Below, one piece after another: positions 31,438 through 63,214 of a DNA stretch of 64,000 nt (within the stretch, counting starts at the first letter, position 1; each line of letters opens with the position of its first letter). The DNA lies in assembly GCA_965285935.1 (NCBI GenBank), contig OZ260665.1, positions 27,218,001-27,282,000 on the forward strand. The letters are read 5' to 3'. Below the pieces are notes generated by a model. That model saw only the letters and a program-made list of their open reading frames with translations. It was not told the origin of the DNA and searched no databases. A program made the position numbers and the translations under genes. This stretch comes from Ophelia neglecta. Lineage: Eukaryota.

Positions 31438-31619
31438 GTATGTATTGTTTATGGTGGCTCGTAGATGAATCGATGACTGCGAAATGAACAAGTCATAATG
31501 CAATGGAGATTTTGATGGGAGGAGACTATTAATTTCACAGACATCCTAATAAGAAGTTTTTTTTTTTGTGTTACATACATATTTGTCTATGTTTCATCAA
31601 ATGTCCCCAAAAATGAGAG
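31438..31619 (+). other. Candidate 182-nt exon (5'UTR plus MFHQMSPKMR, phase 1) beginning at an AG|GTATGT recursive-type site
   Basis: Acceptor TTTTCTTATTTTTCTCTTGCAG| ends at 31437; donor GAG|GTAAGT at 31620; early stops in all frames; three in-frame ATGs from 31589. Confidence 0.4.
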
Positions 31620-31876
31620 GTAAGTTTGCTATTTAGACAAAAAAACAAGACACACAGTGATAGTTAAAGTCATCACTTTACATAGTAGTCAGCTAATAAC
31701 ATCAGCCCTGATCAAAGGGTCATGGTTAGAGGCTTGTATTATCCTTGTATACACACAGCATACAATGAGGTTTGTAAACAGATTATACAAGAAGAAAACA
31801 CTAGCATGTCCAACCTTATTGTCTGGGTGTTAACTTGATCAGTCCGAGCTAATGAGGGTATATTCTCCTCTATCAG

Positions 31877-31920
31877 AACCAAGGGTAATCATGTCATCTA
31901 GTTCAGCTGTGAACAATCCA
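31877..31920 (+). CDS. Candidate 44-nt exon (E)PRVIMSSSSAVNNP, phase 1 to 0
   Basis: Acceptor TATTCTCCTCTATCAG|, donor CCA|GTAAGT; in frame with the phase-1 end of the exon at 31619; also open from a local ATG at 31852. Confidence 0.3.
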
Positions 31921-34900
31921 GTAAGTCGTGTATGGGTAGATAATTACATTTAATAAACTACATTCCATAGTATTTATATCCAGTTACTTGAATCACTGAA
32001 GTGTATCATTCTACATTGTCTCTTTGATTTACTATGCATGGTTTAATAGAGGAAAGCCACGGTTTTTTACATTGAAGGGCAGCAATGAAATAATACTTAC
32101 AGAAGTAGTTTATCTGATGTGATCAGATGGAAATGTGTTCTGCCACAACTGTTGCTTTACTTTAACGGTAGGTGTCAGTACTAGTAGCTGTCATCCAGGA
32201 CAAGCTAAATCTTCCTGTGTTAAGCACAGACCATAGGTATAGATTGTCATAAATGCGTAATTTTCATTTGTTCTATTAATCTGAACCTTGAATTAAACAT
32301 GGGAATTTAACCCATCTAGTGGAACAAGGCAATCAAGTTTGTTGTACCCCAGGAAGGTTAGAAAAATGTCCATGAAATGACTGTGATTTTTATATAAAAG
32401 CCCTTGAGTTAAGCTCTTTGTTGATTGTTACACAGGATGATCAAACTCGTCACCAAAAGGCCTTGCCACGCAATTACACCCAATCAAAAAATGATCAGAA
32501 GGGGATTGCTACAAAAATACTAAAATTGGTCTGTCAGATACAGTCAGTGTGTGGGCCCTGTTTGTGTGCCTTTACAACATCCCCGTTTGTCCTCTCGGTT
32601 ATTACAGCTTTCTCCTCGTAGCTTTCAATGTTTTATTTAATCGCACATCTGACAAACTCCCATATTTTATTGTAAGCATGTAACCCTACAAGTGTTTACT
32701 AGTCATGCCAATGCCAGCTCCCTGTACATTGTGATCTATCTATATACATGTGTGTATATAGATGTGTGAGTGTGGAATTGCATGCCATAAAAAGCCTAGC
32801 TGTCCAGAGCAATACCCGAGAACCGTAACTCATCTTTATGGTCAAACGACTAGGGTAACTTTCTGCCTGGCAACGGGTTATTGCCATCTCTTTCATCAAA
32901 GTCTATGATAATTGTCGACTCCATATACCTTTGGCAGGCCATGTTTGCCATGCTAGACGCTGGGTGTCATTAATAATGGAAAGCCCACTGCTGTTTTCTT
33001 GGGGACTGCCAGGCTTTATGATGAATATAGCTTTTGGCTGATTGAAACCTGGCCAGAGGAAGCTCGGAGTCCTGTTCACTTACGGCTTGCATGACTGTGT
33101 GCGCTAAATTACGGAATGCCCAGTCTTCCAGGCAAAGAAAATTAATCCTGAATAATTTAGTCACCATATGACTTGGCTCTTTCTGAGTAAAGGCCAGATG
33201 TGTTCATTCTATAATGCAGGAGCTCTGGTTAAAGCTGGCTTTGTTTCAACTAAAGCAATTAAGTTTTGGATAATTGCTATAATGGAATTTTTTTAATTTC
33301 GACTGCTCATTGAATTTTTATTGGTAGCATAGGGGCAGTTGGCATAGGTTTTAATTGTGGCATCACATGCAACATAATTGACATTTATCACCAAATTCTG
33401 GATTGCCTGGTTAATTAATTATCAGTAGATTTTCATGTTATTAGTTCTATTAATGTGATTTAGTCGTCAGTCTTTATAACCAAATATTGATATAGTGTGC
33501 ATGATTAAAATTTGGTCTTGACACCTGTTTATGAAATAAACTATGGTGACCAAAATTATGTAGGGGTAAGCTTATAATTGTGATTTGTAAGCTTTATCCA
33601 ATGGACACCTGGCTTAGAATATAAATGATTGCATGCTTTTTTTTCTGACAGTAGTTAAAGTCATGAAGTAGTCATAAAGAAATAAAGATAAGCCTAGTAT
33701 GTAACTTGTCTTTTGTTTTTTCTCCTTCGCTGCTACACACAATATATATCTATATGATGTGGAAGTCTATTTCCAAACTGGTTCACTCTCAACGTCACAC
33801 TAGAAAACATCTCATTCTCTTGGCCAGTGTGTCATCTAAGATGGCGATGGGCCGTACCTAATGCCTGCTGTCCACTTGGTTGCTTCTTTAAACGGGCGGC
33901 AAATCCTTAAGCGATTACGCTTTCTTTTATACCGCGGCTCGTTAATCTCCAAAACTGTCAGAGCTGGTGCATTCTTGCTGCGGTCCTTGTGTGAGATGAG
34001 GTCTGTTTGTATCAATGTTTCGCATGGCAGCTCTTTTAAAGGGGCAGCGCTATGGCTGCCAGACAAAATGTTTACCCTTCTCCGAAATAAAAGATGTAAT
34101 GAAACAAGAATACTGTTAATATGAATTTCCATAATCCTAGCAGCCTTGTTATCATGTCCTCAAATTATACCATGAAATAACAAGTGAATTAACATTGTAC
34201 AAAGGACCTTGCATTTCCTCAGACCAAATTTTTCAGGACACTTAGTGGTTTGGTAGAATAACTTGGTTGTTGAGGCTGAAAATCAAAGAGGAGTGTGGCA
34301 GAGCTCGATATTCCGCCTCGGCAACCAGCAGGTTTCTAGATTGTGATGCAGTGCACATTCTCGGAAGTGGTGTTTTTTGCCTGTCGTCCCAGACTGAGCT
34401 GTGAAAGGGGGGAGCCTAGCTACCACTATCATTCCTAGCCAGAGGAACAGTTCCATTGCTACTCATCTAACCAATCATACATGCGGGGGATGCTCGGGCC
34501 TTCCCATCAGATTACCAAACTCAGCTGTGGCTATCTATTGTACTAAAGGTGATGCTCATGGTGCTCATTCAGGCTGATTTTAGGCCTAGATACAGGACAC
34601 AATTGGAAGTGTGTAGTCCTAGATGAATATCTCTTTGAGTTATGCCTAATTGGTCCACGGCCAATTGTCTGTGAGAGCAATTGGGCAGGCTGTAATGTTG
34701 ATAAAATTCGCCCAGCTCTATGGTGAGATTAAATTTCCCTTCCAAATAAGACACCAGTAAAATGGAGGGTATTAATATTATTCTTCAGCGGCCATTACAT
34801 TTGGAGAGGGCAGATATGGCAGGAAGATAAAAGCCTTGTGTTGGGCTAAGCTGGATGACTGTGCTCCAGGCTGTCCAGGCGCCTAGTGACATCAAGACAA

Positions 34901-35859
34901 ACGGCTTGTAGCCCATCTCTGATGCTCTCCTACTGCTTCAGAAGACTCATTTCCAATGGCGCCAAGTGTCATTAGTTAGATACTAAATGTAGCAGGCCCG
35001 TGGTTGCTAGCTTCATTTGCTGTTCTTGTGGCATTTTATTTTTGTTTCTCTAATAGATGTAGCCTCCTAGATACAATTTTGGCTCAAACATTGGATATTT
35101 TTGTCAGAATAAAAAACTCCTGAACTTTTAAAACTAAAGTGTGTCCTGTACAGTTTGATAGATTGCTTGTAACAAAGCTCCTTAAGTGCAAATGGTAGAG
35201 GCAGAGCAGACTTCGAGAGAGACGATAACCTGATATAAATAGCCTCCGATGTATAATCAGTCAAAGAGCCTGCCTTTACCAGGGTTTAGCCCTTGGTCTC
35301 AACTAACAAGTTGCCGTGAAGATTCTGTCAAGAGAGACGACCGGATTCCACACCCGAGCATGTTCTGTCTGACCTAATTGGGATAAATTCTGTCCTAGTG
35401 TGCCTTTCTCTGGCCCACTGAGCCATGTCTTTCCTGTTACAAAAATTGTTTGACAATAAGGTGGCCTTGCCCCCAAATCTCTCTGTCCAGTGGGCTATGA
35501 TATCTGGCTTCTAGTAGGCATCTGGCTTCTAGTAGGCAGACGGCAATGAGCAGGATTTCTGGGCATAAAATATTCATAACTTATCCTGCCCTTCTAAGAG
35601 ATGAATAGATGCAGGTTTAATTGGATAATGTTGCTTGTTTGTCATCCATTAATTACTTACTTGGGAGTGGCCATGCAAATCAGGCATTAGTATTTCATTG
35701 GCATTATTATGCATGGAAATTATTAGCCTCCCCGGACTTTCATCTGACAAATGATGGTGTTGTCGCCTGATAGTTTGGTTATAGATGTGTGAGTTGGAGA
35801 GAGGTCTAGGCAGTTATGGCAGTGGAGAAACCTTAATCAAATTTACATCGCTTTCTGGC

Positions 35860-36210
35860 ATTAGTGGAGCCAATATTAGGCAGACTGACACCAGATCGCA
35901 AGCCGCTCCCCCGTCCAATGACAAATGACCTGTTGGCATGGGAACACCAGAGTAAAACTCTGCACTTCCTGTCGACGTGGGACGCATTGCTGCTGCCTTT
36001 TCAACTAGAGTTAATCAAAAATAAAAGCACTTTTGGATCTCCCCTACATGGCCGGCCAGCCAAGTCTTCCTGCTGTCGTCTATTGGAGTTAAACCCGTGT
36101 ATAAAACTGGTGGAGAGCAGGCTCTGTAGGCGCCCGTACACTGCTCATTCTACCCGGACTATAACGCCCCGAAGCTGCTCACCCTCGCCCATCCGCTTCC
36201 TGTAAACACC
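35860..36210 (+). promoter_or_regulatory. Putative promoter/5'UTR
   Basis: Locally CpG-rich; CCAAT at ~35869 and ~35915; inverted CCAAT ~36082; TATAAAA at 36100-36106; leads into ACCATG at 36208-36213. Confidence 0.45.
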
Positions 36211-36231
36211 ATGTCCGTTCCTGTTGTTCGG
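36211..36231 (+). CDS. Candidate alternative first coding exon MSVPVVR (phase 0)
   Basis: Kozak-like AAACACC-ATG, 7 codons, then donor CGG|GTGAGT; downstream of a TATA box. Confidence 0.5.
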
Positions 36232-37094
36232 GTGAGTAGTGATCTGCCTAATTTGTGTAGTTAGTTGATGTACATTCCAGGAGTCTCATCTGGTCTTCCT
36301 TATGTACAGATGAGAGTAGCAAGGAATAGCCAAGAATGATACATTTGTATTGGAGAGCTTGCTGGCTAGGCTCCTGCCTGGCTACAGTGCTATAGAGCAT
36401 GTCACAGGAGCAGCCAGTGTAATTGTCTTGATATACACAGGCCTGGCTGCTTGCCTTTCTTTATTCTGGTCCCTCACCAGACTATTATTGCTGTAATTGA
36501 CCTATGCTAAGAACGAAGCACATTCCTTGATTTGATTATAAAGACAGTTAGTGTCCTTCCTGTCTGATTCCTTCTTCAGTGTTCAGTCCAAGTCCCTGGC
36601 TGCTGTCTTGGTCCTGTGTCAGGAGATCAGAGAGGATGCAATAGGTTCAGTCACACTTCCTATATAAGGGACCTGTACTCTACACCAATCAGAATGCATA
36701 TTGCGTTTTTTGCTCAGTTGGCCATAAATGTTACAATTCTTGGCTCAATAAACCTTGAATGTTGCAATTTTTGCAAGACAGCATATTTATTTTTGTGTTT
36801 AGTAGGTTTAGATGGACTACAATGTTATTAATTGTTATAATGTTTACCAATAGTGACTTTAAGAAAACACCAATGAGCTGAGACTATAGCCAGTGGTAAG
36901 CCTGTCATCATTAGATTGTGGAATGTACTTCCCCCTCCCCTACCCATACCCTCCCCTGCCCCCCCCCCCCCTACCCCCCCAATGGTGTTGAGTGTGTGTG
37001 AGATGTCACCATGCTGTCCTGACATGTACACAACATGACTAGGAGCTACCTGTCTCACGCTAGCTCCTTCTCTCCTTCTCGGTTTGTCACTCAG

Positions 37095-37103
37095 TACCAG
37101 CCA
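37095..37103 (+). CDS. Candidate 9-nt microexon YQP (or the end of a first exon from ATG 37035)
   Basis: CU-rich tract CTCCTTCTCTCCTTCTC...CACTCAG|TACCAGCCA|GTGAGT; the frame from AAC-ATG at 37035 is also open to this donor in phase 0. Confidence 0.25.
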
Positions 37104-40100
37104 GTGAGTTCTGATCTAATCTCCATCAGTCAAGTGCCGTCTCTGGCCAGTCAGATTGTGTGCAACATCTTTGCTATGCATTTTTTTTATCTGAAGTGCA
37201 AAATGATTTGAAATCAATCAAGTCGGATGGTGATAAATGTGTGAGGTCAGTTTTGCATATGTATTAATCTTCCAACTATTAAATATTTATTAACTTATAT
37301 AGGACAACTTGTTGTAGCACCATTGAAAAGCTCCCATCAGACAATTTTATTTGTAGCTAACACATTTGAACCTACATTAGATACATAGACAATATGAGAT
37401 GTACTTTGAACTTTTGGTCTCACTTCCTTTCATGGCCCAGTTACATATTTGAGTCCATAATAAGAATAACAACATCTGTGCCAACTTTGGGGGCCTTTTC
37501 GACATTTATGTCAACAGTGCTCCTTGAGAAGAATCCTCTGTGATTCAGTACTTTGCCAAGTTTACTTTCAAAGCTAATCTCTACTATTGGGGCTTACAAG
37601 ACAAGCAATATATACTGAGTGTCCAAACCTCTAGTTATTCTAGTTTCAATATTTTATTCTTCAAGTTCCCAATGCATAGCAATATTGTTGAGAGCTTTTC
37701 ATGGTAGTTGGTATTTTTTGCCAATAAGGATAAGCACCTAAAGCTTAGGAATCACTGTACATGTACATATATGAAAAGCAATTGACATGCTATGCTTGCC
37801 CCATAACATTCCCTTAAACATTTCTATTCTGGATATCGGCCGTGTGTTTACGAGCTGGGCCATTGCAGAGCTCTTCTCTCATTGTAGGCCCTTGCCGAAG
37901 CCTTTTAGTGGGGGAAATTGCTGTCAAAATCCTAATGAAATCCTATATAATTTTGTTATTGCCATGTTTCTAGTGTGAGGTCACAGTTAGTTAGCGGGGT
38001 AGGTCTGTCGGGGCCGGGCCCCTAATGGACCTGTCGTTTTATTAGCCTCATTGGAGATTCCTGCATGTCTCTGCCAAAAAACAAAGCCATGTTTTATCAG
38101 CCCATTCTTGAGGACATTCGACAAATTACCTGCCGTGAAACTCACATAAACTGAGCTCCCATCGCGTAACCACTTTAAACAGCTACAAAATATGATGATA
38201 TATATATTAATTACAAGATAGTTTGTGGCTCTCAGATTCTAAGGTTGTTGTAATTTTAACTACAAGCCACCCAGGCTTGAGTTCTGGTGTGAAGTAGAGA
38301 GCTATAGACTTGTCAGCTAACAGGCAAATCAGTGTTAAAAATGATGGGGAGGTTTCTTAGTAAAAGGTGAAAATTAGCATCACAATGGAGTTGTTATCAC
38401 TAAGTGAAACTTGAGGATGAAGACTTAAAGATGCAAGCCAGTACACAACATCAACATCAGATTGAGAGGAAAAAACCTCCTGCCAATTTTTATATATTAG
38501 GGTGTCCCTATCTAGGTTCTTTTGTAAAGTACATTTTAAATAAATTTTGATTAATAGTTAGTGAAGTAGTACTTAAGTAATGAAGCGCACACACTGCACA
38601 TTTGGCCAAGAGCATTTAGGACCAGTCCGTGTCATAACAACCAACTGTGTGAAAAGAAAACACATCATCCCAGAGCATTGTGTCTACCATAGTACCATGA
38701 TATATATTGTGTATACTAGTATAAAAAAACTAATCAAGTAATTAGCTTGGCCCACAATAATGATATCAATAATTTCATTCATTGATTCAGGATAGAGTTT
38801 GTTGTATTGATTAGTGTGTTAGGATACATTTATACGTTTATGTTGAGTGTGTAAAAAGATAACTGATATGCATTGTTGGTGCAAAAATATTTTATAGAAA
38901 GAAGTTTGGACAATTCCATTATAAAATGTAAGATCTTAACAAAAAGTAGTATTGGAGACGTCTTTTGGCCTTAGTTTAAGTGAGAAAATACATATTACAT
39001 ATTACTAGTTGTACCAAGGAGATATGAACGCAGTCATCAAAATATTTGTCTGAAAAAATGTGCTGATAAATTGTGCTTTACACAGCATGAGAATGATCAA
39101 TAGAGAACTATGATCTTAGTCCAATACCAATGCAAAGGCTGGTACACATTCAAGGCAAAACGGTCTCAGAATGCAACGACCTGCTTTAAAAAACAGAAGA
39201 AGATTTAGACCTTTTTTTTTTCATGTCTTAAGCAGGAACACGCGGTTGCCATGGTTAAGGCCCGTAAAGCAGCTCCACAGCTCGGTGTTAGAATGTTACA
39301 TTGCTGGATTCCTCGGCTGGTAGCCACAGGTATATGTCTGCCCCTCGGTGTGTGAACTTTATTGAGTTTGGCGGTTGTTTTTATCACAATTGTGCTGCTA
39401 GCTTCATTAATCAGTGACCTGTGTGCTGCTTGCTACGTGAGCAGGCTGCAGTCCGGTTTCCACATCATAGCACGGAATACCACCGAGAGTGTGGAAGGAT
39501 GAAACTTAACTTTACATTTAACAAGTTACAGTTAATGAGAGTCAAGTCTTTTTCCTTGATTTTGATGCCATATTGTAGGACTATAATGCCTGTTGACCTG
39601 AGAGCAGTAAGCTAGGATCTCCCTGTATGCCTTTTTTTGGTCAGTCCAGGTTTCCTGTAGATGACACAAACTGTATGGTGAGCCTCCTGTAGCATATCTA
39701 AATGTAGATTTGCACTCGCTCATTTTACTAAAACATGGTTGATTGAGTCTGAATATATCCAATAAGTGATGTTCCTGTCTATGAACACTGATCTCATGAG
39801 ATTGAATTTCATTAATAAATGCAATATCCCTGCTGATTAAAGGGCTATTCCACTAATTTTGCATAGCAACCATCAATTTGGGGGCCTGCTATTATTCCAG
39901 ACTTGATTTCGGCTCGCCTTTTGACGCTGCAGTCATATATTGCGTGGCTAGTAGCTGATTGATCAGACCTCTCTGGTATTGAGGCCGGCTAAGCTCATGT
40001 TCTCATACTCACTAAGATGATGTATGCCCCAAAAACAAATCTCTTCATACTTTATTAAATTTTCAATGAAGACATGTCAATATTTTTGCTGTTTGGGATT

Positions 40101-41693
40101 CATATCAATATTCAGGGAAACAAGGGAAGTCAAATAAAGTGTTGTTATGGTCTCTGGATCTGTGTCCTTTGCTAGTAGATGTTTGTTTAGCTGTCTGCCA
40201 GGGATGTGATGAAAATCTTTTGTGATGTGATGCCTCTTTCTTATGCAAACACCAAAATATCTTACTTCGGTATACTGTGGTATCTCTCATCAAGGGCCCA
40301 ACAACACTCCATGGTAATCTGTGATCACATCATAAGTTGTATTCTCTCTTCTCTAGCCATGGAAGCAGAGCTTTGACCTCTGTGTTATTTTGTCACATTT
40401 CTGTTGTACTACTTCTGCTGTGAGATTTACTTGGAAATCTTGCCTGATCAGTCTGATACTACTTCAGATTGCCAGCAATGGGCACACATTGGCATTCCAG
40501 GCAGTATTGAGGTAATTATGATTACTTGTGAGACCCCATGTCCATTTATAGCTCCATACATCTCCATGATGACCTTTGTGGGCAGATCGGACATATTAAA
40601 AGTCTCAGATGTACCCTGGGACATGGGAGATCAGCGGCGGGTGTGATAAATATTCAGGCAGAGCCTGATTTCATGGTCTAATACGCAGGCAGCTTGTTTT
40701 CAGTTGTCCAACGGACACCACTAGATCTGCCAAGCATGCTGGGAATAGAAGATGAGTCGCAACTGAGCTGGCCCTAGTTTCCTAGTTAGCATTCAGATGG
40801 GCATCGGTCTCTTTGACCATTTAGCACATCCCCCATCCATCAATACTCAGCTAGCCTGCAGTCACTGTTGACCATTGATTGTGTCAACAGACCCTGTCTT
40901 TATTAGTTCCTCTGTGAGCGGTGATGGTAATGGCTTGGTCTCAGTTTGAGTTTAGCCTTTAAAAAGGGCCAAAGTCATCTCGGTCATATTTGTGGAACGG
41001 TTTAGATGGCATGACTTTTTGTATTTGAGGCTGATTTCTCTGTGTACACTTTAGGGTATGGAAGAAATGAGACGGTCTCTTAAACTACCTTCGTTGCCTG
41101 GGGGCACCGCACTGATCAATTCCAATTACAAGAGAAGGCCAATTGGGCAATGGTGGCTTTAAGATGGGAGGCCAATGCTTTGTGGTGTAAGGCAGGGGTC
41201 TGCTCAAGTGGTAGAACACCTGACACTGTGAACATGTAACACCCTGCTTTACATCTCAGTGTCACTGTTAGACAGTTCTAACTGTGGGATCAGGGGTTAA
41301 ATCCTAGTTCAGTCTCCCATAGGGTCAAAGGTGGCGGGGTTAGGCCATGGCTTCAGGCCTTCGCTCAGGTAAAAGTTATTCAGAGTATGCCTATACCACA
41401 TTAAATGAATTTCCGTCAAATTAAGCCCCTTCCGCCTGCAAGGAAAACGAAATTATTTCTGTAATTCATTCAAATTAGGCTTAATACTTCAGAATTGGAG
41501 TGGCCAAAAAAATAGATGACACATGCACTTCAAACTGTAATGAAAAAGCAATATGTTGCATTTATAAGATGAATCATTCAATTTACGAGGTGCTGGCTGG
41601 TTTAAGGAGAAGTCTAGGGGCTGTTTTTCTATCCAAAAGGGTACTAGACAGGCTATCTCATGGGACATAAACCCACCAGCATCATATCTCAAT

Positions 41694-48193: not shown

Positions 48194-48374
48194 GTGAGTG
48201 AGTGAAAATATATTGTCTGTCATGCACCAATATTGGAGTAATCTGTGGAGGGTTTGCTTTATGGGTTAGTCAGCTTTGGTCCCATGGAGCTTTGTCGGCC
48301 AGTTTGTTATGATAATATTTGATTTTATTAAAGGCTTAACAGATATGGCCTGGTCTAGCTTAGGTGTGCTAGGG

Positions 48375-48578: not shown

Positions 48579-48686
48579 ATGTTGCTACTAACTAGTAACG
48601 GTACCATTTCTACAGCCACAGGCCCACCTACGGGGACTGGGATTGACTACGAAAAATACATGAAGGCACTGGAGACTAACTTACAG
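48579..48686 (+). CDS. Candidate alternative first coding exon MLLLTSNGTISTATGPPTGTGIDYEKYMKALETNLQ (phase 0)
   Basis: 36 open codons ending at CAG|GTAGGC; the other two frames are closed; protein-like amphipathic C-terminal half; promoter motifs immediately upstream. Confidence 0.55.
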
Positions 48687-50618: not shown

Positions 50619-50723
50619 ATGTTGCTGATACGAGGACCCCCTCTCCTGCAAGGTTCTAGTCCATCACTACAGCTGGCCACTGCATCCTCGGCCATAAGAC
50701 CACCGAGCATGCTCACAGTCAAG
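50619..50723 (+). CDS. Candidate alternative first coding exon MLLIRGPPLLQGSSPSLQLATASSAIRPPSMLTVK (phase 0)
   Basis: 35 open codons (second in-frame ATG at 50709) ending at AAG|GTAATA, followed by an AT-rich intron. Confidence 0.45.
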
Positions 50724-51158
50724 GTAATAAGACATCCTCTTCATGTTATGTACATCCGCGCTCTGACTCATCTATGACTTAATATAGTATAACAATTGTA
50801 TTCCTTTATTACCTAAAATTACCTTACATTGTAAAAGGCAGTTATCGTGGGATGTATAGCCAGTAAAAGGTGTGTGCTTTATCTGAATATGTTTATACTT
50901 ATAAAACATCTCATTCCTTGGTCTAATAGTACCTGTTTTAAACCTACTTGGGTTTATTCTCTAGTATCCATATGGCGGGTGATAGTGTACATCCTGTGCT
51001 GTTCTGTGAGGATTGTTATAGCTTCCAGGTTGTCTGTACGGTCTCGTCTTTTAATATATAGAAGATAAAAGGTCCTAAATGTCTTAAAGTATTCTGGTTT
51101 CATACAACTTACAATAAAAACTGCCCGACATCTTAATAAAATCATAATAAAATTACAG

Positions 51159-51908
51159 TACAGGTGATTACAGAGATTGGCCTGTACAAGTGAATGGCCT
51201 GTACAGGTAATTACAGAGATTGGCCTGTACATGTGATTATAGAGATTGGCCTGTACAGGTGATTACAGAGATTGGCCTGTACATGTGATTATAGAGATTG
51301 GCCTATACATGTGATTATAGAGATTGGCCTGTACATGTGATTATAGAGATTGGCCTGTACATGTGATTATAGAGATTGGCCTGTACATGTGATTATAGAG
51401 ATTGGCCTGTACATGTGATTATAGAGATTGGCCTGTACATGTGATTATAGAGATTGGCCTGTACATGTGATTATAGAGATTGGCCTGTACATGTGATTAT
51501 AGAGATTGGCCTGTACATGTGATTATAGAGATTGGTCTGTACAGGTGGCCTGTACATGTGATTATAGAGATTGGCCTGTACATGTGATTATAGAGATTGG
51601 CCTGTACATGTGATTATAGAGATTGGTCTGTACAGGTGATTACATAGATTGGCCTGTACAGGTGATTACATAGATTGGCCTGTACAGGTGATTACAGAGA
51701 TTGGCCTGTACAGGTGATTACAGAGATTGGCCTGTACAGGTGATTACATAGATTGGCCTGTACAGTTGATTACAGAGTTTGGCCTTTACAGGTGATTACA
51801 GAGTTTGGCCTGTACAAGTGATTACAAAGATTGGCCTGTACAGGTGAATGGCCTGTACAGGTGATTATAGAGATTGGTCTGTACATGTGATTACAGAGAT
51901 TGGCCTGT
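51159..51908. repeat. 26-bp minisatellite, ~28 copies
   Basis: Unit TACA(G/T)GTGATTA(C/T)AGAGATTGGCCTG; homogeneous central block. Confidence 0.97.
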
Positions 51909-53247
51909 GACCAACTTAACACAATGGCCTTGGAGAGTAATATACCATAAAATCATGCTTATAATTGTTGGGCATACAAACTGGAAGAACAAGCTTTTTG
52001 TGGCAACTGTAAAATCTTTAAAACAAATTCTGATTTAATCCTATGTACAATCTGCCATCAGGTGTCATTTCTATTTTTACCTTTGATTTGCTAATTCTTG
52101 GCTTATTCTTGGTATTGCACCTGTACAAGATGAAGGCCGGATTCTAAGTCAGCCTGTCCCCTGCCAAGCCCTTTGTCCCAGCAGCACCATTGGGGATGTC
52201 TGTCATGAAGGTGGGCTGAGATCGAGGTTGGTTTCCTCAGGGCATTTCTTGACATGCCAGTCTAATCATTCTATTTGTATGATGTTTATAGGGTTTCTCC
52301 TGTCTTTGGTTGTTTTACCTGTCAGCCATGACTCGGGCTCTCCTAGTGTCCACGGTAGATCTAATATAATACCAGTGTTAGCTCTTCTTACATGGCTCCA
52401 CCAATCTACATCGGTATACAGTTACTATCTGAGCCATACAGGTGGTTCATTTGATTCCATTTTGCCTGTCCACTAAGACATCTTTAGTATTAACTTATCA
52501 AGGACCATTTCTTACATGGTAATTTCTATCTGGCCCCCAATGATAATTACATGGATATTTCTTAGTTTTCTCACCAGCCACAGGGCAATGCATTTAAGAT
52601 CTCCATTTATCTATTTTCCTTAACTTTTATAATAATTACTAAGAACACAAATCTAGTTGTTTCAGAGCCTTGGCCATCCAGAAAAAAATCAGTACACTTT
52701 ACTGATAAGCAATTGTTGTCTGCCGACCCGACAGGTAATTATTGCTCACTAGGCTAGGTGTTAAGGTAATTATCACTAGAATTAAATTAAGAATAACCAG
52801 GTAACACCTGGAATTTCTTGACAAGCTGCTAGCCTTGATATAATGGACCAAGGTGGCCCGATGTAGTAATGTATAAAGTCGTGTCAGGTATTGCCTCCTT
52901 GTGAGACGGCCATGATGGGTTGCTGCTCCATAAATCATGCCCAAAAATGAGTGTTTCGGGTGGTTAGGTTAGGAAATAGCTTTAATTTTGAGGGAAAAAA
53001 TGATTCAGTAATCATTCTCTGAGCAACGAATTGAGAAATATTATATTTCACCTAAAACAGTATGGAGACAGAATAGGCCCATATTTATGTATGCAGTGCA
53101 TATCAGTGGTGTGAGTGGGGTGACGATTCCATGATAATTATATACAGTACAGTGGGTGACCAACAGTGGTAGAAAATCATGTGCAAGGAAATCGTGTGAT
53201 GTGTTGGCAGCTACATTCAGCTGCAGACGGAAACGTGGCGTATATAA

Positions 53248-53420
53248 TTATGATAATAAATAGTATGCAGGTAGAGTGTACATGGCGTGTATCCATCAGG
53301 TTTACAGACGTATGCTTCACCGACATTCAGAACACAGATTTTATGTATTATTATGATAATAAATAGTATGCTGGTAGAGTGTACATGGCGTGTATCCATC
53401 AGGTTTACAGACGTATGCTT
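53248..53420. repeat. 70-bp direct duplication (period 103 bp)
   Basis: 53248-53317 versus 53351-53420, 1 mismatch. Confidence 0.9.
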
Positions 53421-55680
53421 ATTTTTAGAAGATAACTGATCAAAAGAATTTATATAAATGTATAAATAAATGTATAAATATTTGTGTCTGTACAAACAAT
53501 ATTATTATGATGTGGCTACCAATCAGAGAGCATGTCCACTGCCATACGCACATGGGTTTAAAGGTCAATGGACAACCTGTGTAGTCAGGATATAAAAGTA
53601 TGGGGTCGTGCTGTAAAAAACGTGAGATATACTTGTAGTCAATTTTATCTCCATAATTAGACAGCAGATTGGCCTGTAGATGCATGGTTTGGCTAAGCAT
53701 GTTGTCAGGAGTCAACAATTGATGTTGACTGTGTGGAGCCATGCACCGGAAATCAGCAGACGGATGATACCACGAACTCTAGGCACGACCCCACAGGTGG
53801 TCTCATTGACCATGCATGACAGTGATGTCATATCTGTGGTTTGGCCATAACTTGTCTAATAAACATCTGAACCTGTATGGCCCTTAGTACACTTAGTGTC
53901 TGTGTGTAGGGAGTTATCTCTAATAGACAATATTAATGCCCTATCCTAGAGGCAAATACTTTAATGTGTTAACCATTAAACCTGGATACATGTATTACCA
54001 GGGCCATAGTAAACAGTGACTGGCAGTAATATACACAATACCAGCAGATAAAGGGTTAATCCAGATTCTATACATTGCCTTTAGGGGTTAAGGTATAAAG
54101 CCATTTTTGCTGTTTATCATTATTGTTCCCATTTATGTCAATAATGTACATCAAGAGCCAGCTGAGTCTCTTGGAGCCCAGACCTGTATGTGTGTGTATA
54201 ATATAGGACTGTGTTCCCAGGTTTGTAGGATGCTGACCGAGGCCTGTGTAGGGACTAGCTAGTGTAATGGTCCTCTTGGAGATATCTCTTGATGGAAGCA
54301 TGTTTGTAGCTAGCCTTGGACATAGAAATGGATGGATTGTAGTATTTATATTGTTTAATGTCGCCCTGTGATTGCACACACACTTTGCAGAAAGCCTTCG
54401 TCGTAAAATACCCCAAGTTGGGGTGGAAGTTCTACCACTCATCGGGGTATAAATCGCTTGCCTGTGCTCATCTTTTATCCCACTGAGTAGCCCTAAAAGC
54501 AGTCCATTATCTCCTACTTCAACTGAATTGCAAGAAATATATCATGAAGGAAACTTTGTACATTATTAATCAGAATCTAGTCTCTTTAACTGTTCTGGTA
54601 TTATGAAAATAATGCCTTCAGATTGTCATTATAATGCCCTGGGTAATTCTGGTGTACAGCTTCATTGCAGTCAGACTAGGGTCGTTCAAGTCATGGCTTC
54701 ATAGCCTGTCACTTTATATCCAGGGAATCAAGCTCAATACTCTCAATTCAGATTTTTTGTTGATGGTAACTGTTCAGTACACCAACTCTCCTCCTAGCCT
54801 AATTACCCCTAGGCCTATTACATTCATCAACCACTACCAAGGAAATGGTATTCATAGGTTCAGGGAAATTCATATACCTGGTTAGAATAGGTGTATTCCC
54901 AGAAACAAATTCCTCAATAGCCAGGTGTGGCAGAAAGTGAAATTAGACAGACTTATTTTTGAGTTGTGAGATATGACTTTACGATGGTAATTGCTGATTA
55001 TTTTGAATGGTGGAGTGTTTATGTAGATTGACCCTGTATGTTAATAAGGAGTTTTCTTTGTCCTGGACAAAGTGATGGGTGGTAAAGGTGACATGAACAC
55101 TGGAATTTCTAACCTAGCACCAGACTTTTGTGTATGGCCTCCTGGTTACTAACACATTCACTATACATGGCTAAGCCAAAGAAAATCATTTGTTTGAGAT
55201 TTTGGCATCATCAACATTTAAGTAAATGAACCAAATGTGAATTGTGTATAAAATATATTCACTAACTTTGCTCTGCTATGTTGCTGTTAATAATTTATTC
55301 ATTTCTAAAAAGATGACACTGTTCTTAAAAGTCTGATTCAAATAACTCCCTGTCAGAATTGTATTCTGGTGGCGAAGGTGATGTACTAAATCTGACAGAT
55401 GATTTACTTTACTGCTTCCAGGTAGCAGTATAACATCTCTAGGACTTTAAAATATTGACTTTACTGTCATTCAGAGAAAGTTCACACTGGCCTTTTATTG
55501 GCCTGTCCAGGATACTTGGGAATATGGCCGCTGCCGTAAGAACATCTGGCATCGCGTTTCACAAGATGTGGAAATGATTATTATACATTTCTTTAATATC
55601 TGTTTTCAGATAAAGCTCATTTATTCAGGTATATTACTATGACTTCCTGCGGCAGTACATGACTATAAAGCACAGGATTG

Positions 55681-55694
55681 GTTGCCATGGTAAC
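55681..55694. promoter_or_regulatory. Consensus RFX X-box
   Basis: GTTGCCATGGTAAC. Confidence 0.45.
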
Positions 55695-58600
55695 CAAGGC
55701 AGGTGTGTGCCACTGGGCTTCCTGCTTTAGGTACAAACAAAGGCAGGATCCTCATGTCTGTCCGTCTGCTCCGCCAACCTCACAAGGCAGGTGGTGTGTG
55801 GATACCTAAGGTAGATCAAAACACACAATGTCTAAACACCACCAACTCTTAGATCCCTCCCCTTGAAATGGTCATCAGTCAGGGCTACTGTGATTTACTG
55901 ATTAACCCTACTGATGTTTATCATACATACATTTGTCTGGCACAACAGTCCAGGAAGCAATATCACATTGCTTGAAGACTGTTCACTTTGAGCTGGTGAC
56001 TCCAGTATCAGTTTGTAACTATTTAATGTAATCAGGCCAATTTGGTGTCTAACATGATGCATTCTCCAGGGAGGACCTTGACAGAAACACTGCACCGTGC
56101 ACATTATATTTCATGTCATTTTCTATGGGTAAATACCTGTCCTAATGGGGCTAGTCTGTTCTCATTAATCATGATATATAGCTAAAGTAGACAGCATACA
56201 TTTTGTCAAAGGCAGCTATAAGTACTGTAAGCATCAAGGTTGTTTGTAGTTTCAGCCATTATTCTCTGTATTGAGTTGGTAAGATGGCTTAATGTTGTTA
56301 CAACACAGGAAAAGAGAGAGACAGCAGACGGCATACCTAGATCTAGTAGATCTCTTCTCCGGTTTTTAATGGCTCAATAGATGCCAGTTCCCATTGCAGG
56401 GATAAAACTATTGTCCTTCACCTTAAATCTGTGTTCCTATGGCAGATGCAGAATAGGCACCCTTGGTAAGCAGTTTATTCATGTGAACAGTGAGCAAGCA
56501 TGGTTTTTAATAGCCAGTGTCAACAGCACAAACCGCCATTGAAAGAGCTGATGTGGATAATCTGCATTCCTGGCGCACAGATTCTCCAATAAATCCCTGT
56601 ACAATACACAAGCCTTTGCCATCTAACTGGAGTGCCTCTCGATTGTGGCTCCTCTACAAACAAAAGGCTTGATGCCTTGCCTGCAACACAAAGAATTGAC
56701 ACCACCCCTTTAACCCCTTTCACATTCCAGGAACTCACAAACAATGGCACTGTTCCCCCCACCCCTTCCCCCACTTCCCAATCAGCTCCCGAACTCAGTC
56801 ATTGGCTTTCACTGCCAGTCTTTGTCACGGATGATTTGTTGACATAAGGATTTTTTATGATTATTAAATAAACAGAGTTTGTGGGATATTGGGGCTTGTG
56901 ATATTGAGAGAGAGTGTGGCTGTGTTATTATAGACAGGTGGTGTGACAACGGAGCAGGCTGATGATTGAATCCCTTTGTATCCAGCTGGCCTACTAAATA
57001 AAGCCTTTGTCTGCCTACTGTTTGATGTGGCAAAAACCCAACCTTTATTGAAAGACTATTTTTGTTGTAATTTTGCATGCTAAACACATCATTTGACACT
57101 ATTTAGGCCGGGCTAGTTGTATATTGACCCAGTAAATCAGGATTGAAGAGATTGACTCTTGTCTGTGTCACATAGGAAAGCCTTTGTCATATTTTCTCTT
57201 TATATTATTTTTTCTGTGTTTCACCCTTCACCTTGATGGGATCCACCACATTGAGCCCAGTATTAATGTGCAGTTGTTTTTACCATCACAGAGTGTGAGA
57301 AGCTTCGTAATATGATGTATTGCGGACACATCTTGACCTCTGGTAGTCTAGGCAGGATGTAGGAGTTGACTGTTGCAGTCCCTGCACAATAGGTCTGCCA
57401 ATACCATAAATGTCACAGTGTTAATAGTTTTTCTGTCATTGTTATTTTCCAGCTTGCTTCCTCAGCATGTAGCCATTGAGCCTGCCTCTGGCTCTGAAGG
57501 CTTAGGAGAGTGCCCGAGTTAACAACTGGCCTCACCTCGGTTGATGTCTTATAATACAAGTCAGATCTGACTACTGCTGAAGCTTAGCCTTAATTGTGGG
57601 TCTTTGGTGGTAGGAGGGTGGACTGACAAAGGGCTGGTGTGTCCCTGAAGGGATGAAGAGGTCAGCCTCAATAGGACCCAGCCATGTATGGCAGGCTCTG
57701 GGAGACCTGCTGATAATGATGTCAAATGGACAAGACCAAATGGTACTTGTGGGGCGTGCCCCTTGTCTCTGGCATCTGTGATGTGTAATATTACATTATC
57801 TGTTTGGTTATAAATCAACATTAACACAGGGAAAAAAATGATGGAAAAGGATTTGAAATTAATAAATGAAATGATTTATCACTCTAATAATATAATAAAT
57901 CATAGTTATATCAATAATTGAAAAGTATTATAACTAGTGTATATCTTGACACAATGCCCAGACTTTGCCAAGACTAGAAATATCATTTCTTGCAAATATT
58001 GTTTTAATTTACATTCATTTTGTATATGTCTCTCTCATAGTTAAGGCTATATTGACAGCACTTCATTCTATGTAATTTGTTGTCTTTAACAACGATGTCA
58101 TTCCTCCGAGCTGGGATGGAAGTCCCATGTTAACTAACATAATAAACACCATCTAAGTAGATAGGCTCACTATTAAATAAACCTCAATAACTATTATCAT
58201 AGGCACACACCATGTACTGTTACCATGCCATTCATATATACACTGCGGTTAAGACAATTTAGAAGGAATATTTACACTTTAAGTCAGTCATGTTTGTTAA
58301 AGGACAATTGCAGCCATGACATTCTTCTGTCTCTGTTCCTTCACTTAGTACAGGGTTATACATTGTACCTGGTGCTGGCTTGTTACCAGGCCTGCTGCTT
58401 GTAGAGCAGAATGACAAACACTAGTCTAGGTGATGTTTACCAGGAGCAGCCTACTATACATGGTATCAAGAGACCTGTCTCAACGCTCATTCTAACAAAA
58501 CAAGTTGGTGCTACATGGCTCATGATAACGGGTCACAAGATTGTTAACAATGCGCAAATGGTTGGAAAACTAAGTCGTATAATTGTGGTTGAGAATATGG

Positions 58601-58763
58601 CCTGATGAGACCAGTTAATGTTGGTCTTGTGATTAATAGTCTACCATATACTATAGCTTGGTGGCCATAAAATGTGTTTTTGATGCATACAAGCGCCATA
58701 TCCATGTTTGAGGCCTTGTCATGTAGTGGGCATGTTGTCATGTCCTGAAGGTTGGGCCAGACA

Positions 58764-58772
58764 ATGGTGAAG
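58764..58772 (+). CDS. Candidate alternative start MVK (phase 0)
   Basis: Strong Kozak ACA-ATG-G, 3 codons, perfect donor AAG|GTAAGT; in-frame TGA upstream at 58746. Confidence 0.25.
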
Positions 58773-61106
58773 GTAAGTTGTCCCTGTTGTACATGCACAC
58801 CTTGCATCCCACACATTGCATCCTGCAGGCAAAGTAACAGGGCCTTGGTGGAAACTTGACTAGGGATGTATCTGAAGATGTAACAGCAGTTAGGACTGAT
58901 ATCTCCATTTCCCAGCCCCCAGCTAAATTAGTAGGCTGATAGCTGGGACAGCCAGAGCAAGGGAACCCCTTGTAAAATGCCACATGATATACACAGAAAA
59001 TCACCATCAATTATTGAGAAATCAACTTGGATGTCCTTGCTCTGTGTCAATGTGATGAATTGCTGATTCTCAGGGGTAATTTGTCACAAAAGATCAGGCT
59101 TTGATCACACATCTCTCTGACTGCTGTTCATATTTCATTTGATCGCCTGTGAAGGGAAGTCTAACTGGCATATTTCCATAAGGATGGACAAGAAGGTAGA
59201 ACTATGTACCCTCTCCAAACTCATAGAATTACCTTATTGCCATCGTGAAGATCTTTTAGAATCAGAAATACAAAATCATCATGTGTAACAGTTAACAGTC
59301 TTATATTACATGTAGTTTTACAGCCCCCCCCCCCCCCGCCCCCCTTTGTCAAAGTTAATACTATGCATGCTCGCTGAATTGTAACATGGTGTACCTTTCC
59401 GACCTTTATGCATCACAGCTATTTCCTAAAATGGTTTACATCTGTCTAGTTCAAGGCCTTTTGTAGGCAGAGTCCTGATGAGAAATGGCGGAGAAGAGGC
59501 GGAGGGATCGTAGATCGTAGGGTGTCCTCTACACTGATGACAGATAAGAATGTGTACCTCCCTTTACGTTACAGGTGACCTGGATAACCCTGTGCTGCTT
59601 GTGACTTCGACTGTTTGACACAAAACAAGCTAAGACTGAAAAATAAAGTAAAAAACAACATCCTACACAACTGTTGGTATTTGTGTATCATAAAAATGTC
59701 TAAGACACATTTGCTGTGGTGTATCTTGATGGATTTGCCTCATAGAGTCAGTATTTATTAACCAGTTATGGCTGTCCAGTGTAGAGTGCACACAATGCTC
59801 AGTGGAATATGTTCTGATTAAACCATGGTATGAAACAACTACTCTCAATTTCAACTTGATTTTATGTTTTCATCAATGGCAAAGCAGAGAGTTTGTTGTT
59901 TTCCTCTGAATATGATTTTAATTCTTCTTTAGGGCCTTTTTGATGGTTCTGGGGGAAAAGGGTGATGTCACATCTTTCACTCCACACAGAAGAATGCTGT
60001 TGCTGTGCCATCATGTTCGTCCTTGCATTTTGAAAAGTGTTATTTTATTATGACATTAGCCTAATCAAAATGAGGTCCCTCTGTATTGTATGACAAAACC
60101 AGTGCCCTGAGGACCAAATAAATGTAGTATTTATGAATATTGACTGTCAAATCCTGGGCATTAGGCCCATTGGAGAACAGCCTTGTGTATGTTTTCTACA
60201 ATCAAGTCGAGTGGGGAGCCTTGCTCTTGGTCTGTTACAAACCAGACTCCTCCATTATACATTCTTACTGGGTGTCTTAGATGTGCCACATGCCTTTGGC
60301 AAGCCTAAGAAGTGATCTGAATTTCAACTGCTGTATTGCCAATCATGTAACACCTATAAAAGGAATGTAGTCTCTAAAGCTAGAAGCCAGGGAAATATAC
60401 TTGACAGTTGTGTTAGTTAAATAAGAGGACACAGTGGCACTGAGGCCATTTTGAATTAAACTGGTATTAAGGATGGACGTGGGTATATGGATAGATGTAG
60501 GTAACCAGGAATGGAGGGATTCTCAGTTATGTTGACCAGAGACAGCCCAGTGTTGCTGGGGTCTGTTAGCTATGTGGCTGGTATCCTGCTTATGTAGTTT
60601 ATGATAAATAGGATTGTCATTGACCACTCAGTGATCAGTATGTTTTGTACAAGTTTTTACTTGAAATCTTTATTTTAATTTAAGAAGATGCGTTATTATG
60701 AAGGAGGCATAGTTCCTTCCCTGCAGTAGTATCCAACTCGGTTACTGAGGACAAGAAGTAGTTTTTGATTCTGGAAAGAAAAAGCTACACCATTTCTAAA
60801 TGCACTTAGAAATTAAATTAAAGCTCTAGCTGCACACACTGTAACTGCAGTGATCGATTTGACATCTTGTTTGGAGAGATGTCTGAGAGATTCCTGCACC
60901 CTCCTCACTACTTGCTCTCTGTATATCTACAAGGATAAAAACATTTCAATACCTTTTATCCAATAAATCATATCTAATGCATAAGTTTTTTTGCCATCAG
61001 CAGTCTTCATTTTGTTATTTTTAATGTAATGCAGTGCAATGTGTGACTTTCCTCCCTGTGCGTTAAAAGTGTCCTTACTTTCAGCCTATTTCCAGTTTTT
61101 TTCCAG

Positions 61107-61286
61107 GTTATGGGAAGATTGTTTGGTGGCTTTATCTTATTTCCCAGTAAGGTGATCAGGGGTTTGTATCAAAGGGCATACCCTGACTTCCTGTCAGAAG
61201 CCAGTCCCGGGTGGTTTCCAAGTGATGGCGCATGGTTTGCCAGAGATCTCCGCCTCCTGCATGCCGCCAGCCTGCAGGACCAGTCT
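61107..61286 (+). CDS. Candidate symmetric 180-nt exon (phase 0-0), VMGRLFGG...AASLQDQS
   Basis: Acceptor TTTTTTTCCAG|, donor TCT|GTGAGT; only the phase-0 frame is open throughout; no recognisable domain. Confidence 0.3.
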
Positions 61287-62216
61287 GTGAGTTATACTCT
61301 AGATATACCAGTGACAAGTCATATCGACTGAATTCAAGTTGAAGGATTTCCTTTTGCCTGTTCTCCCCTTTCGGCTTATGGTTGCTGTGGATAATTCTCA
61401 CCCTTTGAGATTTCCCATGGATCCCTGACACAGCTGCTATCCAGTTGATAAACCATCTCAAAGGACTTTCCAGTAATTAAATTGTCTGAAAGGCTCATCC
61501 ATGACCACAGAGAGCAGCTAACAATATAGTTTGATGGTATCACCCTTGCAGCAACCATATGGTGCCTGTCCGACCAAGCCAGTGTTCAGATACTCCTTAC
61601 ATGCCTTTGACCAGTAGACAACTTTTGCACAACCAGATTATACAACCAGTGTATGCAAATTGTCTGCCCCATCAATTCCTGCCCTCCGTTTGCAGTCGCA
61701 GCCCTTGCTGGTCCTTTCTGACTTGGTGGGCTGCTGCTGTTGCAGTAACTTTTGGGTGTGATCACTAATGAGCTACACTCTTGAGTACAGTGTAGTGGGT
61801 GTTTGTTGGCTGAGCCCAGGACCAGAGACTCCCCTCATTGCTTCTGACTGCCTACAGCCAGATCCTGGCTCTCCTGCTGTCCCGTCTGGCAGGTCTGGGT
61901 CGTAACTCCTGGCAGCATCATCGCTCTCCCGCCTCTCGCAGCAATCTGCAGTCAAGCCATTGTTACCCGGCCACAGTGGCGCTCCATTCAGACTGACTGC
62001 AGATCTTAGCTAGCTCGGATAGCATTGGGAAGTGGGAAACAAGAGTTCCTGTTATCACTGCCACTACTGATACCAGGCGTACATGCTGACTGGAGATGAG
62101 GCTGATCTAAAGACCCGACAGTAGGCAAGCACTCTTAGTTAATACCACTAAAATACCACATTGTGGCAGTGGATTCTGGCAAGACGGCCGCCAACACTTT
62201 CCTCACCCCTCTTCAG

Positions 62217-62240
62217 CTAAGGCTTCCTGTCCTTATTAGG
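62217..62240 (+). CDS. Candidate 24-nt microexon LRLPVLIR (phase 0-0)
   Basis: Acceptor CACTTTCCTCACCCCTCTTCAG|, donor AGG|GTAAGT; the other two frames contain TAA/TAG. Confidence 0.35.
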
Positions 62241-63214
62241 GTAAGTCACTCCATCATATACAATAACTGTACAAAGCAATCAAGGGAAATCAGCATTATG
62301 TAATATCAAGCTTTAAGTTGAATCTCTAATCAGTATTTCAAGACAGAAGCTCTTCAAAAGTCCTTGTTTCTAAATGGCTTCAGTAGACCATGATGTTTCC
62401 TTTGTCTGGTTGACCCTTTGAGATAAGTAGCAAAGGTCAAAGCTTGGTTGTATTTCACAGCTTAATACATCATTAATAAGATCAAAAGAAACTATGAGAG
62501 GATCATTTAGACGTACATAGGTGTGGAGCTGAACTTCATGTGATTTCTTATACAGGCTGAGTCAATGCCCCATGGCTGACCCAACTCTGCAGCTCATAAG
62601 GGGCTCCTTTCAATGAAAATGGATCAATTTGTGTGCTAAAATAGTCGTGTTACTATGGTATTTCTGCTCAGCTGGGAAGCCTGAATGCCTAGTAGCCTGG
62701 GAGAGCATCCATTGTGGATTCAGATAAAGTCTAGGTGCACTAGCTGCCCATTGCTGTCCAATTGTAGGCAGATAACATGTGGAGATGGAGTTGTGATTGG
62801 CCTCTGTAGCCACTGATGAGGCTATAGGCATTCTGTAATGTAGTTTATAGTCCCCTGCAGTGAGCTGGCCGAGCAACACTCAACAAATTGTAGTCTGTTC
62901 AATAACGGATCCCTTGCTCCATGGGGTGACTTTAAATTAAATTGGGCTGACCACCGGCTACATCTTCTGCTGTTGGCAGTCATTACGTGGAGTGATATAT
63001 TAGTGACAGTCTCAGGCAGTAGGCAGGGATAGCCTTTCCTACAGGGTACAGGAGCAATCAATGGCCAGCCAGCCTTTATTAGAACGCTCATAATGCCATC
63101 TGCTATCCCAAACTTAAAACATGGCTATCATTTGGCCACTTTGTCCAGTGGCCCCATGTGTCATTTAAGGATGGATGTCAGTTTGGGAACAGCATTTCAG
63201 CCTGGCCGTCTGAA

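What the first reader, a model, noticed from the sequence alone, without database searches (positions are those of the whole stretch)
31438..62246. Hidden array of interchangeable phase-0 N-terminal exons feeding one large gene
Seen in sequence: short open segments that stop at GT donors exactly on a codon boundary: 31920 (...SAVNNP|GTAAGT), 36231 (MSVPVVR|GTGAGT), 37103 (..YQP|GTGAGT), 48073 (MSQF...HLVQ|GTAAAC), 48686 (MLLL...TNLQ|GTAGGC), 50723 (...MLTVK|GTAATA), 58772 (MVK|GTAAGT), 61286 and 62240. The four best (36211, 47996, 48579, 50619) stand out compositionally, and three of them (36211, 48579, 50619) have their own promoter-like upstream patch. Inference: a multi-promoter cassette of unrelated N-termini splicing to one constant phase-0 exon downstream of the window (variable-first-exon/constant-body design). 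Standard ORF calling misses it entirely. Caveat: ATG...GT in phase 0 also arises by chance, so the weaker members may be false.
Basis: partly seen in the sequence, partly recalled or inferred. Interest (0 to 1): 0.8.

Follow-up and report, generated by a model that had tools for sequence, protein, structure and literature searches.

The report
Alternative start exons of RBFOX gene
The stretch lies inside the huge first intron of an invertebrate RBFOX (fox-1) splicing-regulator gene, a family already known to swap short start exons; one of the nine proposed start exons looks real and the other eight are no better than chance.

Summary
It shows no preference for the + strand or for phase 0.

The host gene is the genome's single RBFOX (fox-1) homologue, on the + strand. 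Its first constant coding exon starts 30 kb right of the window, at window coordinate 93,995. Its acceptor falls on a codon boundary, just before His-Met-Val-Gln.

In mollusc, annelid, nemertean, brachiopod and arthropod RBFOX models and transcripts, many unrelated N-terminal exons join at this same junction. By homology this genome has:
- a class A first exon at -61.4 kb, with the only CpG island;
- a class B exon at +76.6 kb;

Candidate 36,211-36,231 has a TATA box, a CpG-rich patch and a strong donor, but no comparative support. The other seven have nothing.

The design is known for RBFOX. The scan has reported similar first-exon arrays on other DNA of this genome.

The parts
1..64000 (+). 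Part of the roughly 138-kb intron between the RBFOX class A first exon (window -61,413..-61,201 = G000:C8:27,156,587-27,156,799) and the class B exon (76,587-76,667 = C8:27,294,587-27,294,667). The constant exon is at 93,995-94,201 (C8:27,311,995-27,312,201).
   Evidence: RBFOX exons were mapped by tblastn of P0012 and P0013 and by motif scan. T>A skew on the + strand and CpG depletion (median o/e 0.32) run from about -60 kb to +120 kb. No Pfam domain was found in 95 window ORFs of 72 aa or more. The candidate regions are single copy.
50619..50723 (+). Supported alternative coding start exon ('class D'), 35 codons: MLLIRGPPLLQ...MLTVK, donor AAG|GTAATA in phase 0.
   Evidence: It is the best match, in all six frames of 264 kb, to the in-frame leader of the spliced fox-1 transcript L026 (MLVIRAPSLLPQ...NIK|HMVQ). 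The match is 45% identical over 33 aa, ungapped, and starts at the same Met (tblastn E 0.007). The ungapped score is 55 against a next best of 37. None of 400 composition-matched shuffles reaches 55; the highest is 50. Both exons end in AAG just before the splice to His.
36100..36231 (+). Possible promoter plus short first exon: TATAAAA at 36100-36106, ATG at 36211 (A at -3), 7 codons, donor CGG|GTGAGT after 36231.
   Evidence: The sequence was read directly. The donor scores 10.8. The upstream 400 nt hold 17 CpG, the 99th percentile of the intron. It is the only candidate with a TATA box. There is no comparative or RNA support.
48579..48686 (+).
   Evidence: No homologue was found in the word search of 5.8 billion proteins. 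Its best score against 67 known RBFOX N-termini (36) is below the - strand null maximum of 43.
47996..48073 (+).
   Evidence: It ranks 42 of 311 + strand chance segments, and 12% of - strand segments score as high. The resemblance to P0027 has E 0.06 in a tiny database.
31852..31920 (+).
37035..37103 (+). The CpG content upstream is very low.
58764..58772 (+).
61110..61286 (+).
62139..62240 (+).

Best explanation
The window is part of the first, roughly 138-kb intron of the genome's only RBFOX (fox-1) gene, which is transcribed on the + strand.

Like its relatives, the gene most likely makes proteins with different short N-termini. Alternative start exons are spliced, always on a codon boundary, onto a constant exon that begins His-Met-Val-Gln at window coordinate 93,995. 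If the start exon is non-coding, translation can begin at that Met.

Three such exons are recognisable by homology:
- class A at -61.4 kb, with the only CpG island and probably the main promoter;
- class B at +76.6 kb, an 81-nt phase-0/phase-0 unit that can also serve as a cassette;

The segment at 36,100-36,231 may be a further promoter and first exon. The other seven listed segments are chance coincidences of ATG, open frame and GT in single-copy intronic DNA.

Shown here: gene identity, exon homology, the phase of the junction, and the chance level of the pattern. Inferred, not shown: that these exons are transcribed and spliced in this animal, and that each has its own promoter.
For: Gene identity:
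- The RRM exons (PKRLHVSNIPFRF.., GFGFVTF..EGRKIE) and the terminal ..RFAPY lie at 99.8-114.7 kb on the + strand.
- The gene is single copy.

Constant exon:
- The acceptor reads TTTTCAG|CAC ATG GTG, on a codon boundary.
- The donor reads ACA|GTAAGT, also in phase 0.

Relatives:
- Of the 120 best RBFOX homologues, most carry an N-terminal peptide of 1-157 aa directly before HMVQ. These peptides fall into recurring classes A, B, C and others.
- Transcript contigs L024, L022, L026, L027 and L028 show such junctions in RNA of other species.

Class B:
- tblastn E 3e-9 at 76,617-76,667; profile E 0.0011.
- The same exon lies 11.2 kb upstream of the constant exon in the Paralvinella genome.

Class A:
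- It is the top profile hit (E 0.019; next best 3.6).
- It sits on the only strong CpG island of the 5' region (o/e 1.2) and at the start of the strand skew.
- Its donor GAG|GTGGGT is in phase 0.

Chance level of the pattern:
Against: The class D match is short and rich in S/L/T/P. Default BLASTP finds no seed between the two peptides. The tblastn E of 0.007 came after about 70 N-terminal queries had been tried.

It is unknown whether 50,619-50,723 has its own promoter. There is no CpG patch or TATA upstream of it.

Start exons evolve fast, so the lack of homologues does not prove that the other candidates are false.

The only close relative found (88% identity in the constant exon) could be read for just 10 kb upstream of that exon.
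Confidence: 0.68

Rival explanations
1. One reading: most or all of the nine segments are real, promoter-driven coding first exons of the downstream gene.
For: The downstream constant exon is indeed entered in phase 0. Relatives have up to seven or more N-terminal classes per species. One listed exon is supported and one has promoter-like features.
Against: The number of such segments equals chance on both strands and in all phases. Seven have no similarity to 67 known N-termini beyond the - strand null. 62240 has no ATG, and 58772 is 3 codons. The 48579 ORF has no homologue.
Confidence: 0.05
2. None of the nine is real. The window is plain intron, and the 50,619 match to the L026 leader is a chance similarity of two S/L/T/P-rich peptides.
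For: Default BLASTP gives no alignment. E is only 0.007 after many queries. The donor is weak (GTAATA, score 6.3). There are no promoter features upstream.
Against: It is the top of about 528,000 six-frame positions by 18 BLOSUM units. None of 400 composition-matched shuffles reaches it. The match starts at the same Met, lies on the gene's strand upstream of the constant exon, and ends at ..K (AAG) before a phase-0 GT, as in the transcript.
Confidence: 0.12
3. 50,619-50,723 is real but is not a first exon with its own promoter. It would instead be an internal cassette, or part of a long translated leader, used by transcripts that start at the class A promoter at -61.4 kb.
For: There is no CpG patch or TATA upstream. 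A possible acceptor (..ggcacag|TTGAGG) lies 60 nt upstream, in an open frame. Class B behaves as a cassette in a chiton model (P0073 against P0074). An oyster transcript has an extra exon between class A and the constant exon. The L026 leader runs 260 nt beyond the Met.
Against: The acceptor has a poor pyrimidine tract. The aligned Met starts the similarity in both species. The oyster model of the same class starts a few residues upstream of the motif (P0092).
Confidence: 0.2

Closest known systems
Vertebrate Rbfox1 (A2BP1) multi-promoter 5' region (Casanovas et al. 2020, PMC7214753, citing Kuroyanagi 2009 and Damianov and Black 2010)
   Same: It is a very long 5' region with several alternative first exons, each thought to have its own promoter, all spliced onto the common internal exons. 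Some of those exons add coding sequence to the N-terminus.
   Different: In mouse most first exons are non-coding and the region exceeds 1 Mb. Here the region is about 155 kb, and the recognisable start exons are coding and join in phase 0 directly before a conserved HMVQ. No RNA data are available here.
RefSeq and UniProt isoform sets of lophotrochozoan RBFOX genes (Ostrea edulis, Magallana gigas, Mytilus edulis, Pecten maximus, Lineus longissimus, Lingula anatina, Lamellibrachia, Paralvinella)
   Same: They have the same constant exon and the same junction. N-terminal classes recur: A (MAE..ENKENEG.E), B (..MMWP../..MWIPPGG..), C (MLLTTQ..) and D (..MIRAPVAFQ). This genome has A, B and D.
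   Different: The sequences are strongly diverged. Class D is 35 aa here and 46 aa in L026, but 15 aa in the oyster. Class C could not be placed with confidence.
Clustered protocadherin and UGT1A variable-exon arrays
   Same: Variable first exons with their own promoters are spliced to shared constant exons.
   Different: In those arrays the variable exons are tandem paralogues that encode whole domains. Here they are short, mutually unrelated peptides scattered over 150 kb. This locus is not a member of that kind.

Membership tests
RBFOX (fox-1) gene | Single RRM with the RBFOX signature, and a C-terminal Ala/Tyr-rich region ending ..RFAPY | tested here: met
   Exons at 99.8, 102.0, 104.2, 107.3, 108.7, 112.0, 114.0 and 114.7 kb match P0012 exon by exon, up to 94% identity in the RRM.
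RBFOX (fox-1) gene | Constant N-terminal exon beginning HMVQNQ, entered on a codon boundary | tested here: met
   TTTTCAG|CAC ATG GTG at 93,995. There are 18 library hits, the best at 88% identity.
Multi-first-exon RBFOX locus | Several alternative N-terminal exons homologous to those of relatives, upstream of the constant exon on the same strand, each ending in phase 0 | tested here: met
   Class A at -61,413..-61,201, class B at 76,617-76,667 and class D at 50,619-50,723.
Multi-first-exon RBFOX locus | Spliced transcripts joining each start exon to the constant exon in this organism | not testable with these tools
Junctions are seen only in transcripts of other species.
Multi-first-exon RBFOX locus | A separate promoter for each start exon | tested here: inconclusive
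   A CpG island is present only at class A (o/e 1.2). A TATA box and CpG patch are present only at 36,100-36,231. Nothing is present at 50,619 or at class B.
Protocadherin/UGT1A-type variable-exon cluster | Variable exons are tandem paralogues of one another | tested here: not met
   The N-terminal classes and the nine candidates show no mutual similarity. The candidate regions have no other copy in the genome.

The most novel reading that the evidence does not exclude
The RBFOX start-exon classes (A, B, C, D) form an ancient, conserved toolkit shared by annelids, molluscs and other protostomes. Each would be driven by its own promoter and give the splicing regulator a different N-terminus with a distinct role. 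On this reading the window holds at least two members: the conserved class D exon, and a lineage-specific TATA-driven exon at 36.2 kb.
Probability: 0.3. Interest if true: 0.45.

Novelty: new member of a known kind. Interest (0 to 1): 0.3.

Why it matters
RBFOX proteins are master regulators of neuronal and muscle alternative splicing. Why their genes keep so many promoters and start exons is an open question in vertebrates.

Three points follow from this locus. An annelid-type genome has the same layout. The junction before HMVQ is fixed across protostomes. At least three N-terminal exon classes are conserved in sequence. Together these suggest that the different N-termini are functional, not just by-products of promoter choice.

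For annotation, the result gives concrete exons to add to this gene model. It also shows that listing 'ATG..GT in phase 0' has no predictive value on its own: the pattern occurs at chance frequency.

Tried and rejected
- **RNA evidence.** I did not try further, so read laying could not be used.
- **Walking upstream in the closest relative.** The 34.7-kb ENA contig (L023) could not be extended. Its called genes use TGA as a sense codon, so they cannot be given by reference, and I did not type them.
- **Intron conservation with that relative.** It is nil except for the constant exon, a 44-nt block and a 160-nt block. DNA alignment therefore cannot test the window.
- **Paralvinella locus (L025).** It reaches only 466 nt upstream of its class B exon.
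- **Direct homologue search for the 48579 ORF.** No candidate was found.
- **Pfam on 95 window ORFs.** Nothing was found.
- **Rfam.** Nothing was found.
- **Repeats.** All candidate regions are single copy.
- **Class C.** The profile gives no significant hit. The leads at 82,253 and 85,638 have no counterpart in L023 or L025.
- **P0013 N-terminus.** It has no match in the region.
- **Extra mollusc transcripts (L028, L029).** They only re-found classes C and A.
- **Default BLASTP of the class D pair.** No seed was found.
- **Spliced models.** They were searched exon by exon, by reference.
Full report
**1. Observation**

Eight have an in-frame ATG. The segment ending at 62240 has none. Those ending at 58772 and 36231 have 3 and 7 codons.

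As a class the pattern carries no information.
- Between 31,438 and 62,246 there are 556 "ATG, open, GT in phase 0" segments on the + strand and 437 on the - strand.
- With a donor weight-matrix score of at least 5, the + strand has 31, 35 and 30 such segments in phases 0, 1 and 2. The - strand has 39, 37 and 39. One hundred dinucleotide shuffles give 38 +/- 6.
- At a score of at least 9 the count is 4 against 3.5 +/- 1.5.

There is thus no excess, no strand preference and no phase-0 preference.

The claim that four segments stand out compositionally holds only for 36211.
- The 400 nt upstream of it carry 17 CpG, the 99th percentile of the intron, with o/e 0.68 at the 97th percentile.
- They contain the only TATA box found within 300 nt of any candidate (TATAAAA at 36,100-36,106).

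**2. What the locus is**

The window is G000:C8:27,218,001-27,282,000 of a 762-Mb invertebrate assembly. I fetched 100 kb on each side.

Upstream lies a nitric-oxide synthase gene, ending near -85 kb, followed by transposase-like ORFs.

Downstream on the + strand lie the exons of an RBFOX (fox-1) gene:
- an N-terminal exon at 93,995-94,201;
- RRM exons near 99.86, 101.98 and 104.18 kb;
- further exons up to a stop after ..RFAPY at 114.7 kb.

It is the only RBFOX gene in the assembly.

On the + strand, T exceeds A from about -60 kb to +120 kb. CpG is depleted throughout (median o/e 0.32), as expected for one long, methylated transcription unit. The only strong CpG island of the 5' region lies at -61.9 to -61.4 kb.

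No window ORF of 72 aa or more hits Pfam. Rfam finds nothing. The candidate regions are single copy.

**3. The constant exon and the junction**

The exon at 93,995 is preceded by TTGTTTTTCTTTTCAG and begins CAC ATG GTG CAG. The acceptor therefore falls on a codon boundary before His-Met-Val-Gln. Its donor ACA|GTAAGT is also in phase 0.

**4. What relatives show**

A whole-library search with this exon found 18 relatives, the best at 88% identity.
- Most are ORF calls on genomic contigs that read through the acceptor.
- Two are spliced (P0012 and P0013) and carry 17 and 53 extra residues before HMVQ.

A word search with P0012 returned 4,184 RBFOX proteins, and I inspected the best 120. Nearly all lophotrochozoan and arthropod models place a variable N-terminal peptide directly before HMVQ. 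The peptides fall into recurring classes:
- A: MAE..ENKENEG.E, 53-79 aa;
- B: ..MMWP.. or ..MWIPPGG.., 10-33 aa;
- C: MLLTTQ.., 10-13 aa;
- several others.

Single species such as oysters show six or more classes. The variable-start design is therefore a known property of this gene family in public annotation. It parallels the published multi-promoter 5' region of mouse and human RBFOX1 (PMC7214753).

**5. Which start exons this genome has**

*Class B.* The sequence MSTVMWIPPGGVVGPRM, followed by GTCAGT, lies at 76,617-76,667.
- It matches P0012 with E 3e-9 and the class profile with E 0.0011.
- The same exon lies 11.2 kb upstream of the constant exon in the Paralvinella palmiformis genome.
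- With a likely acceptor at 76,587 it forms an 81-nt unit in phase 0 at both ends. This equals the length of the cassette seen between class A and the constant exon in a chiton model.

*Class A.* The ORF at -61,419 is the top + strand hit of the class A profile, at E 0.019. The next hit is at 3.6 and the best - strand hit is at 1.1. It starts MATEPG.., ends ..SSDGEE before GAG|GTGGGT in phase 0, and sits on the CpG island.

The whole window therefore lies in the intron between class A and class B.

**6.

Against 67 distinct N-termini, none of the nine scores above what chance ATG..GT segments reach on the - strand. The 48579 ORF has no homologue in the word search.

Some transcripts whose called protein starts at MVQ have open in-frame leaders. 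I therefore fetched them.
- The leader of L026 (a JGI transcript contig annotated as fox-1) reads MLVIRAPSLLPQ...TPNIK before HMVQ.
The match is 45% identical over 33 residues, without gaps, and starts at the same Met (tblastn E 0.007).
- The ungapped score is 55 against 37 for the next best of about 528,000 positions.
- None of 400 composition-matched shuffles of the query reaches 55; their maximum is 50 and their mean 32.7.
- Both exons end in ..[V/I]-K, codon AAG, immediately before the splice.
- An oyster model (P0092) with ..MIRAPVAFQ before HMVQ looks like the same class.

There are caveats. The peptides are S/L/T/P-rich. Default BLASTP does not seed on them. About 70 queries were tried in all.

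I rate this exon as probably real (about 0.75). Whether it is a first exon with its own promoter or an internal exon remains open.

**7. The rest**

The segment at 36,100-36,231 combines a TATA box, a CpG patch, a good start context and a strong donor. It could be a lineage-specific first exon, but it is too short to test by homology. I give it about one chance in three.

The other seven have nothing beyond the letters.

Other weak look-alikes are leads only:
- 85,638: MMQMVYQ|GTAAAA, like the L027 leader;
- 82,253;
- 53,507;
- 48,377;
- -9,693.

**8. Limits**

Splicing in this animal is therefore inferred.

The closest relative could be read for only 10 kb upstream of its constant exon. Its introns do not align with ours.

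Spliced models were searched exon by exon, by reference.

**9. Verdict**

The specific array is mostly chance: one of the nine is supported, one is possible and seven are unsupported.

The locus is a new member (probably annelid, given the closest homologues from Paralvinella and Lamellibrachia) of the known multi-start-exon RBFOX genes. Interest is modest.

Noticed in passing
window 104,085-104,276 (L005; C8:27,322,085-27,322,276) and 93,110-93,272: Four UGCAUG motifs lie within 200 nt around the RBFOX RRM exon at 104.18 kb. Two more (93,245 and 93,265) lie in a roughly 160-nt block upstream of the constant exon that is conserved with the relative's contig L023:8787-8947. These may be sites of RBFOX autoregulation.
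   Followed up: partly
window 89,657-89,700 (L003): A 44-nt block is 91% identical to L023:4747-4789, inside an intron that otherwise does not align. It reads as a pyrimidine tract plus AG followed by open sequence. It could be a small conserved exon or a splicing element.
   Followed up: no
window 85,638-85,658 and 82,253-82,300 (L003, L002): Two short ATG-started segments end at phase-0 donors and resemble class C start exons of relatives: MMQMVYQ|GTAAAA and MLTKPMYYP..GP|GTGTAT. No counterpart was found in L023 or L025.
   Followed up: partly
window 21,295-23,927; 41,686-44,068; 5,797-7,051: Three large minisatellites lie inside the intron: 27 nt x 99 copies, 32 nt x 74 and 37 nt x 34. They explain the long spurious ORFs and the GC peaks there.
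   Followed up: no
window 18,028-18,381 (-) and 109,389-109,745 (-): Two ORFs share a peptide (..TVP.CDSG.NALFRVL.HWSTCRRHQTGNPT..), which points to a dispersed repeat of unknown kind. Neither hits Pfam.
   Followed up: no
window -99,130..-85,300 and -72,300..-66,200 (L020-L017): The upstream neighbour is a nitric-oxide synthase gene on the + strand. Between it and RBFOX lie Harbinger-like and piggyBac-like transposase ORFs.
   Followed up: no
window 68,500-70,300 (L001): A CpG-rich patch (o/e up to 1.07, 26 CpG per 400 nt) lies 7 kb upstream of the class B exon and overlaps short tandem repeats. It may be another promoter or a repeat.
   Followed up: no
L029:212-400 (oyster transcript): In an oyster fox-1 transcript, the class A exon is followed by an extra exon with stop codons before the constant exon, so translation would restart at MVQ. 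This is a possible switch between long and short N-termini.
   Followed up: no
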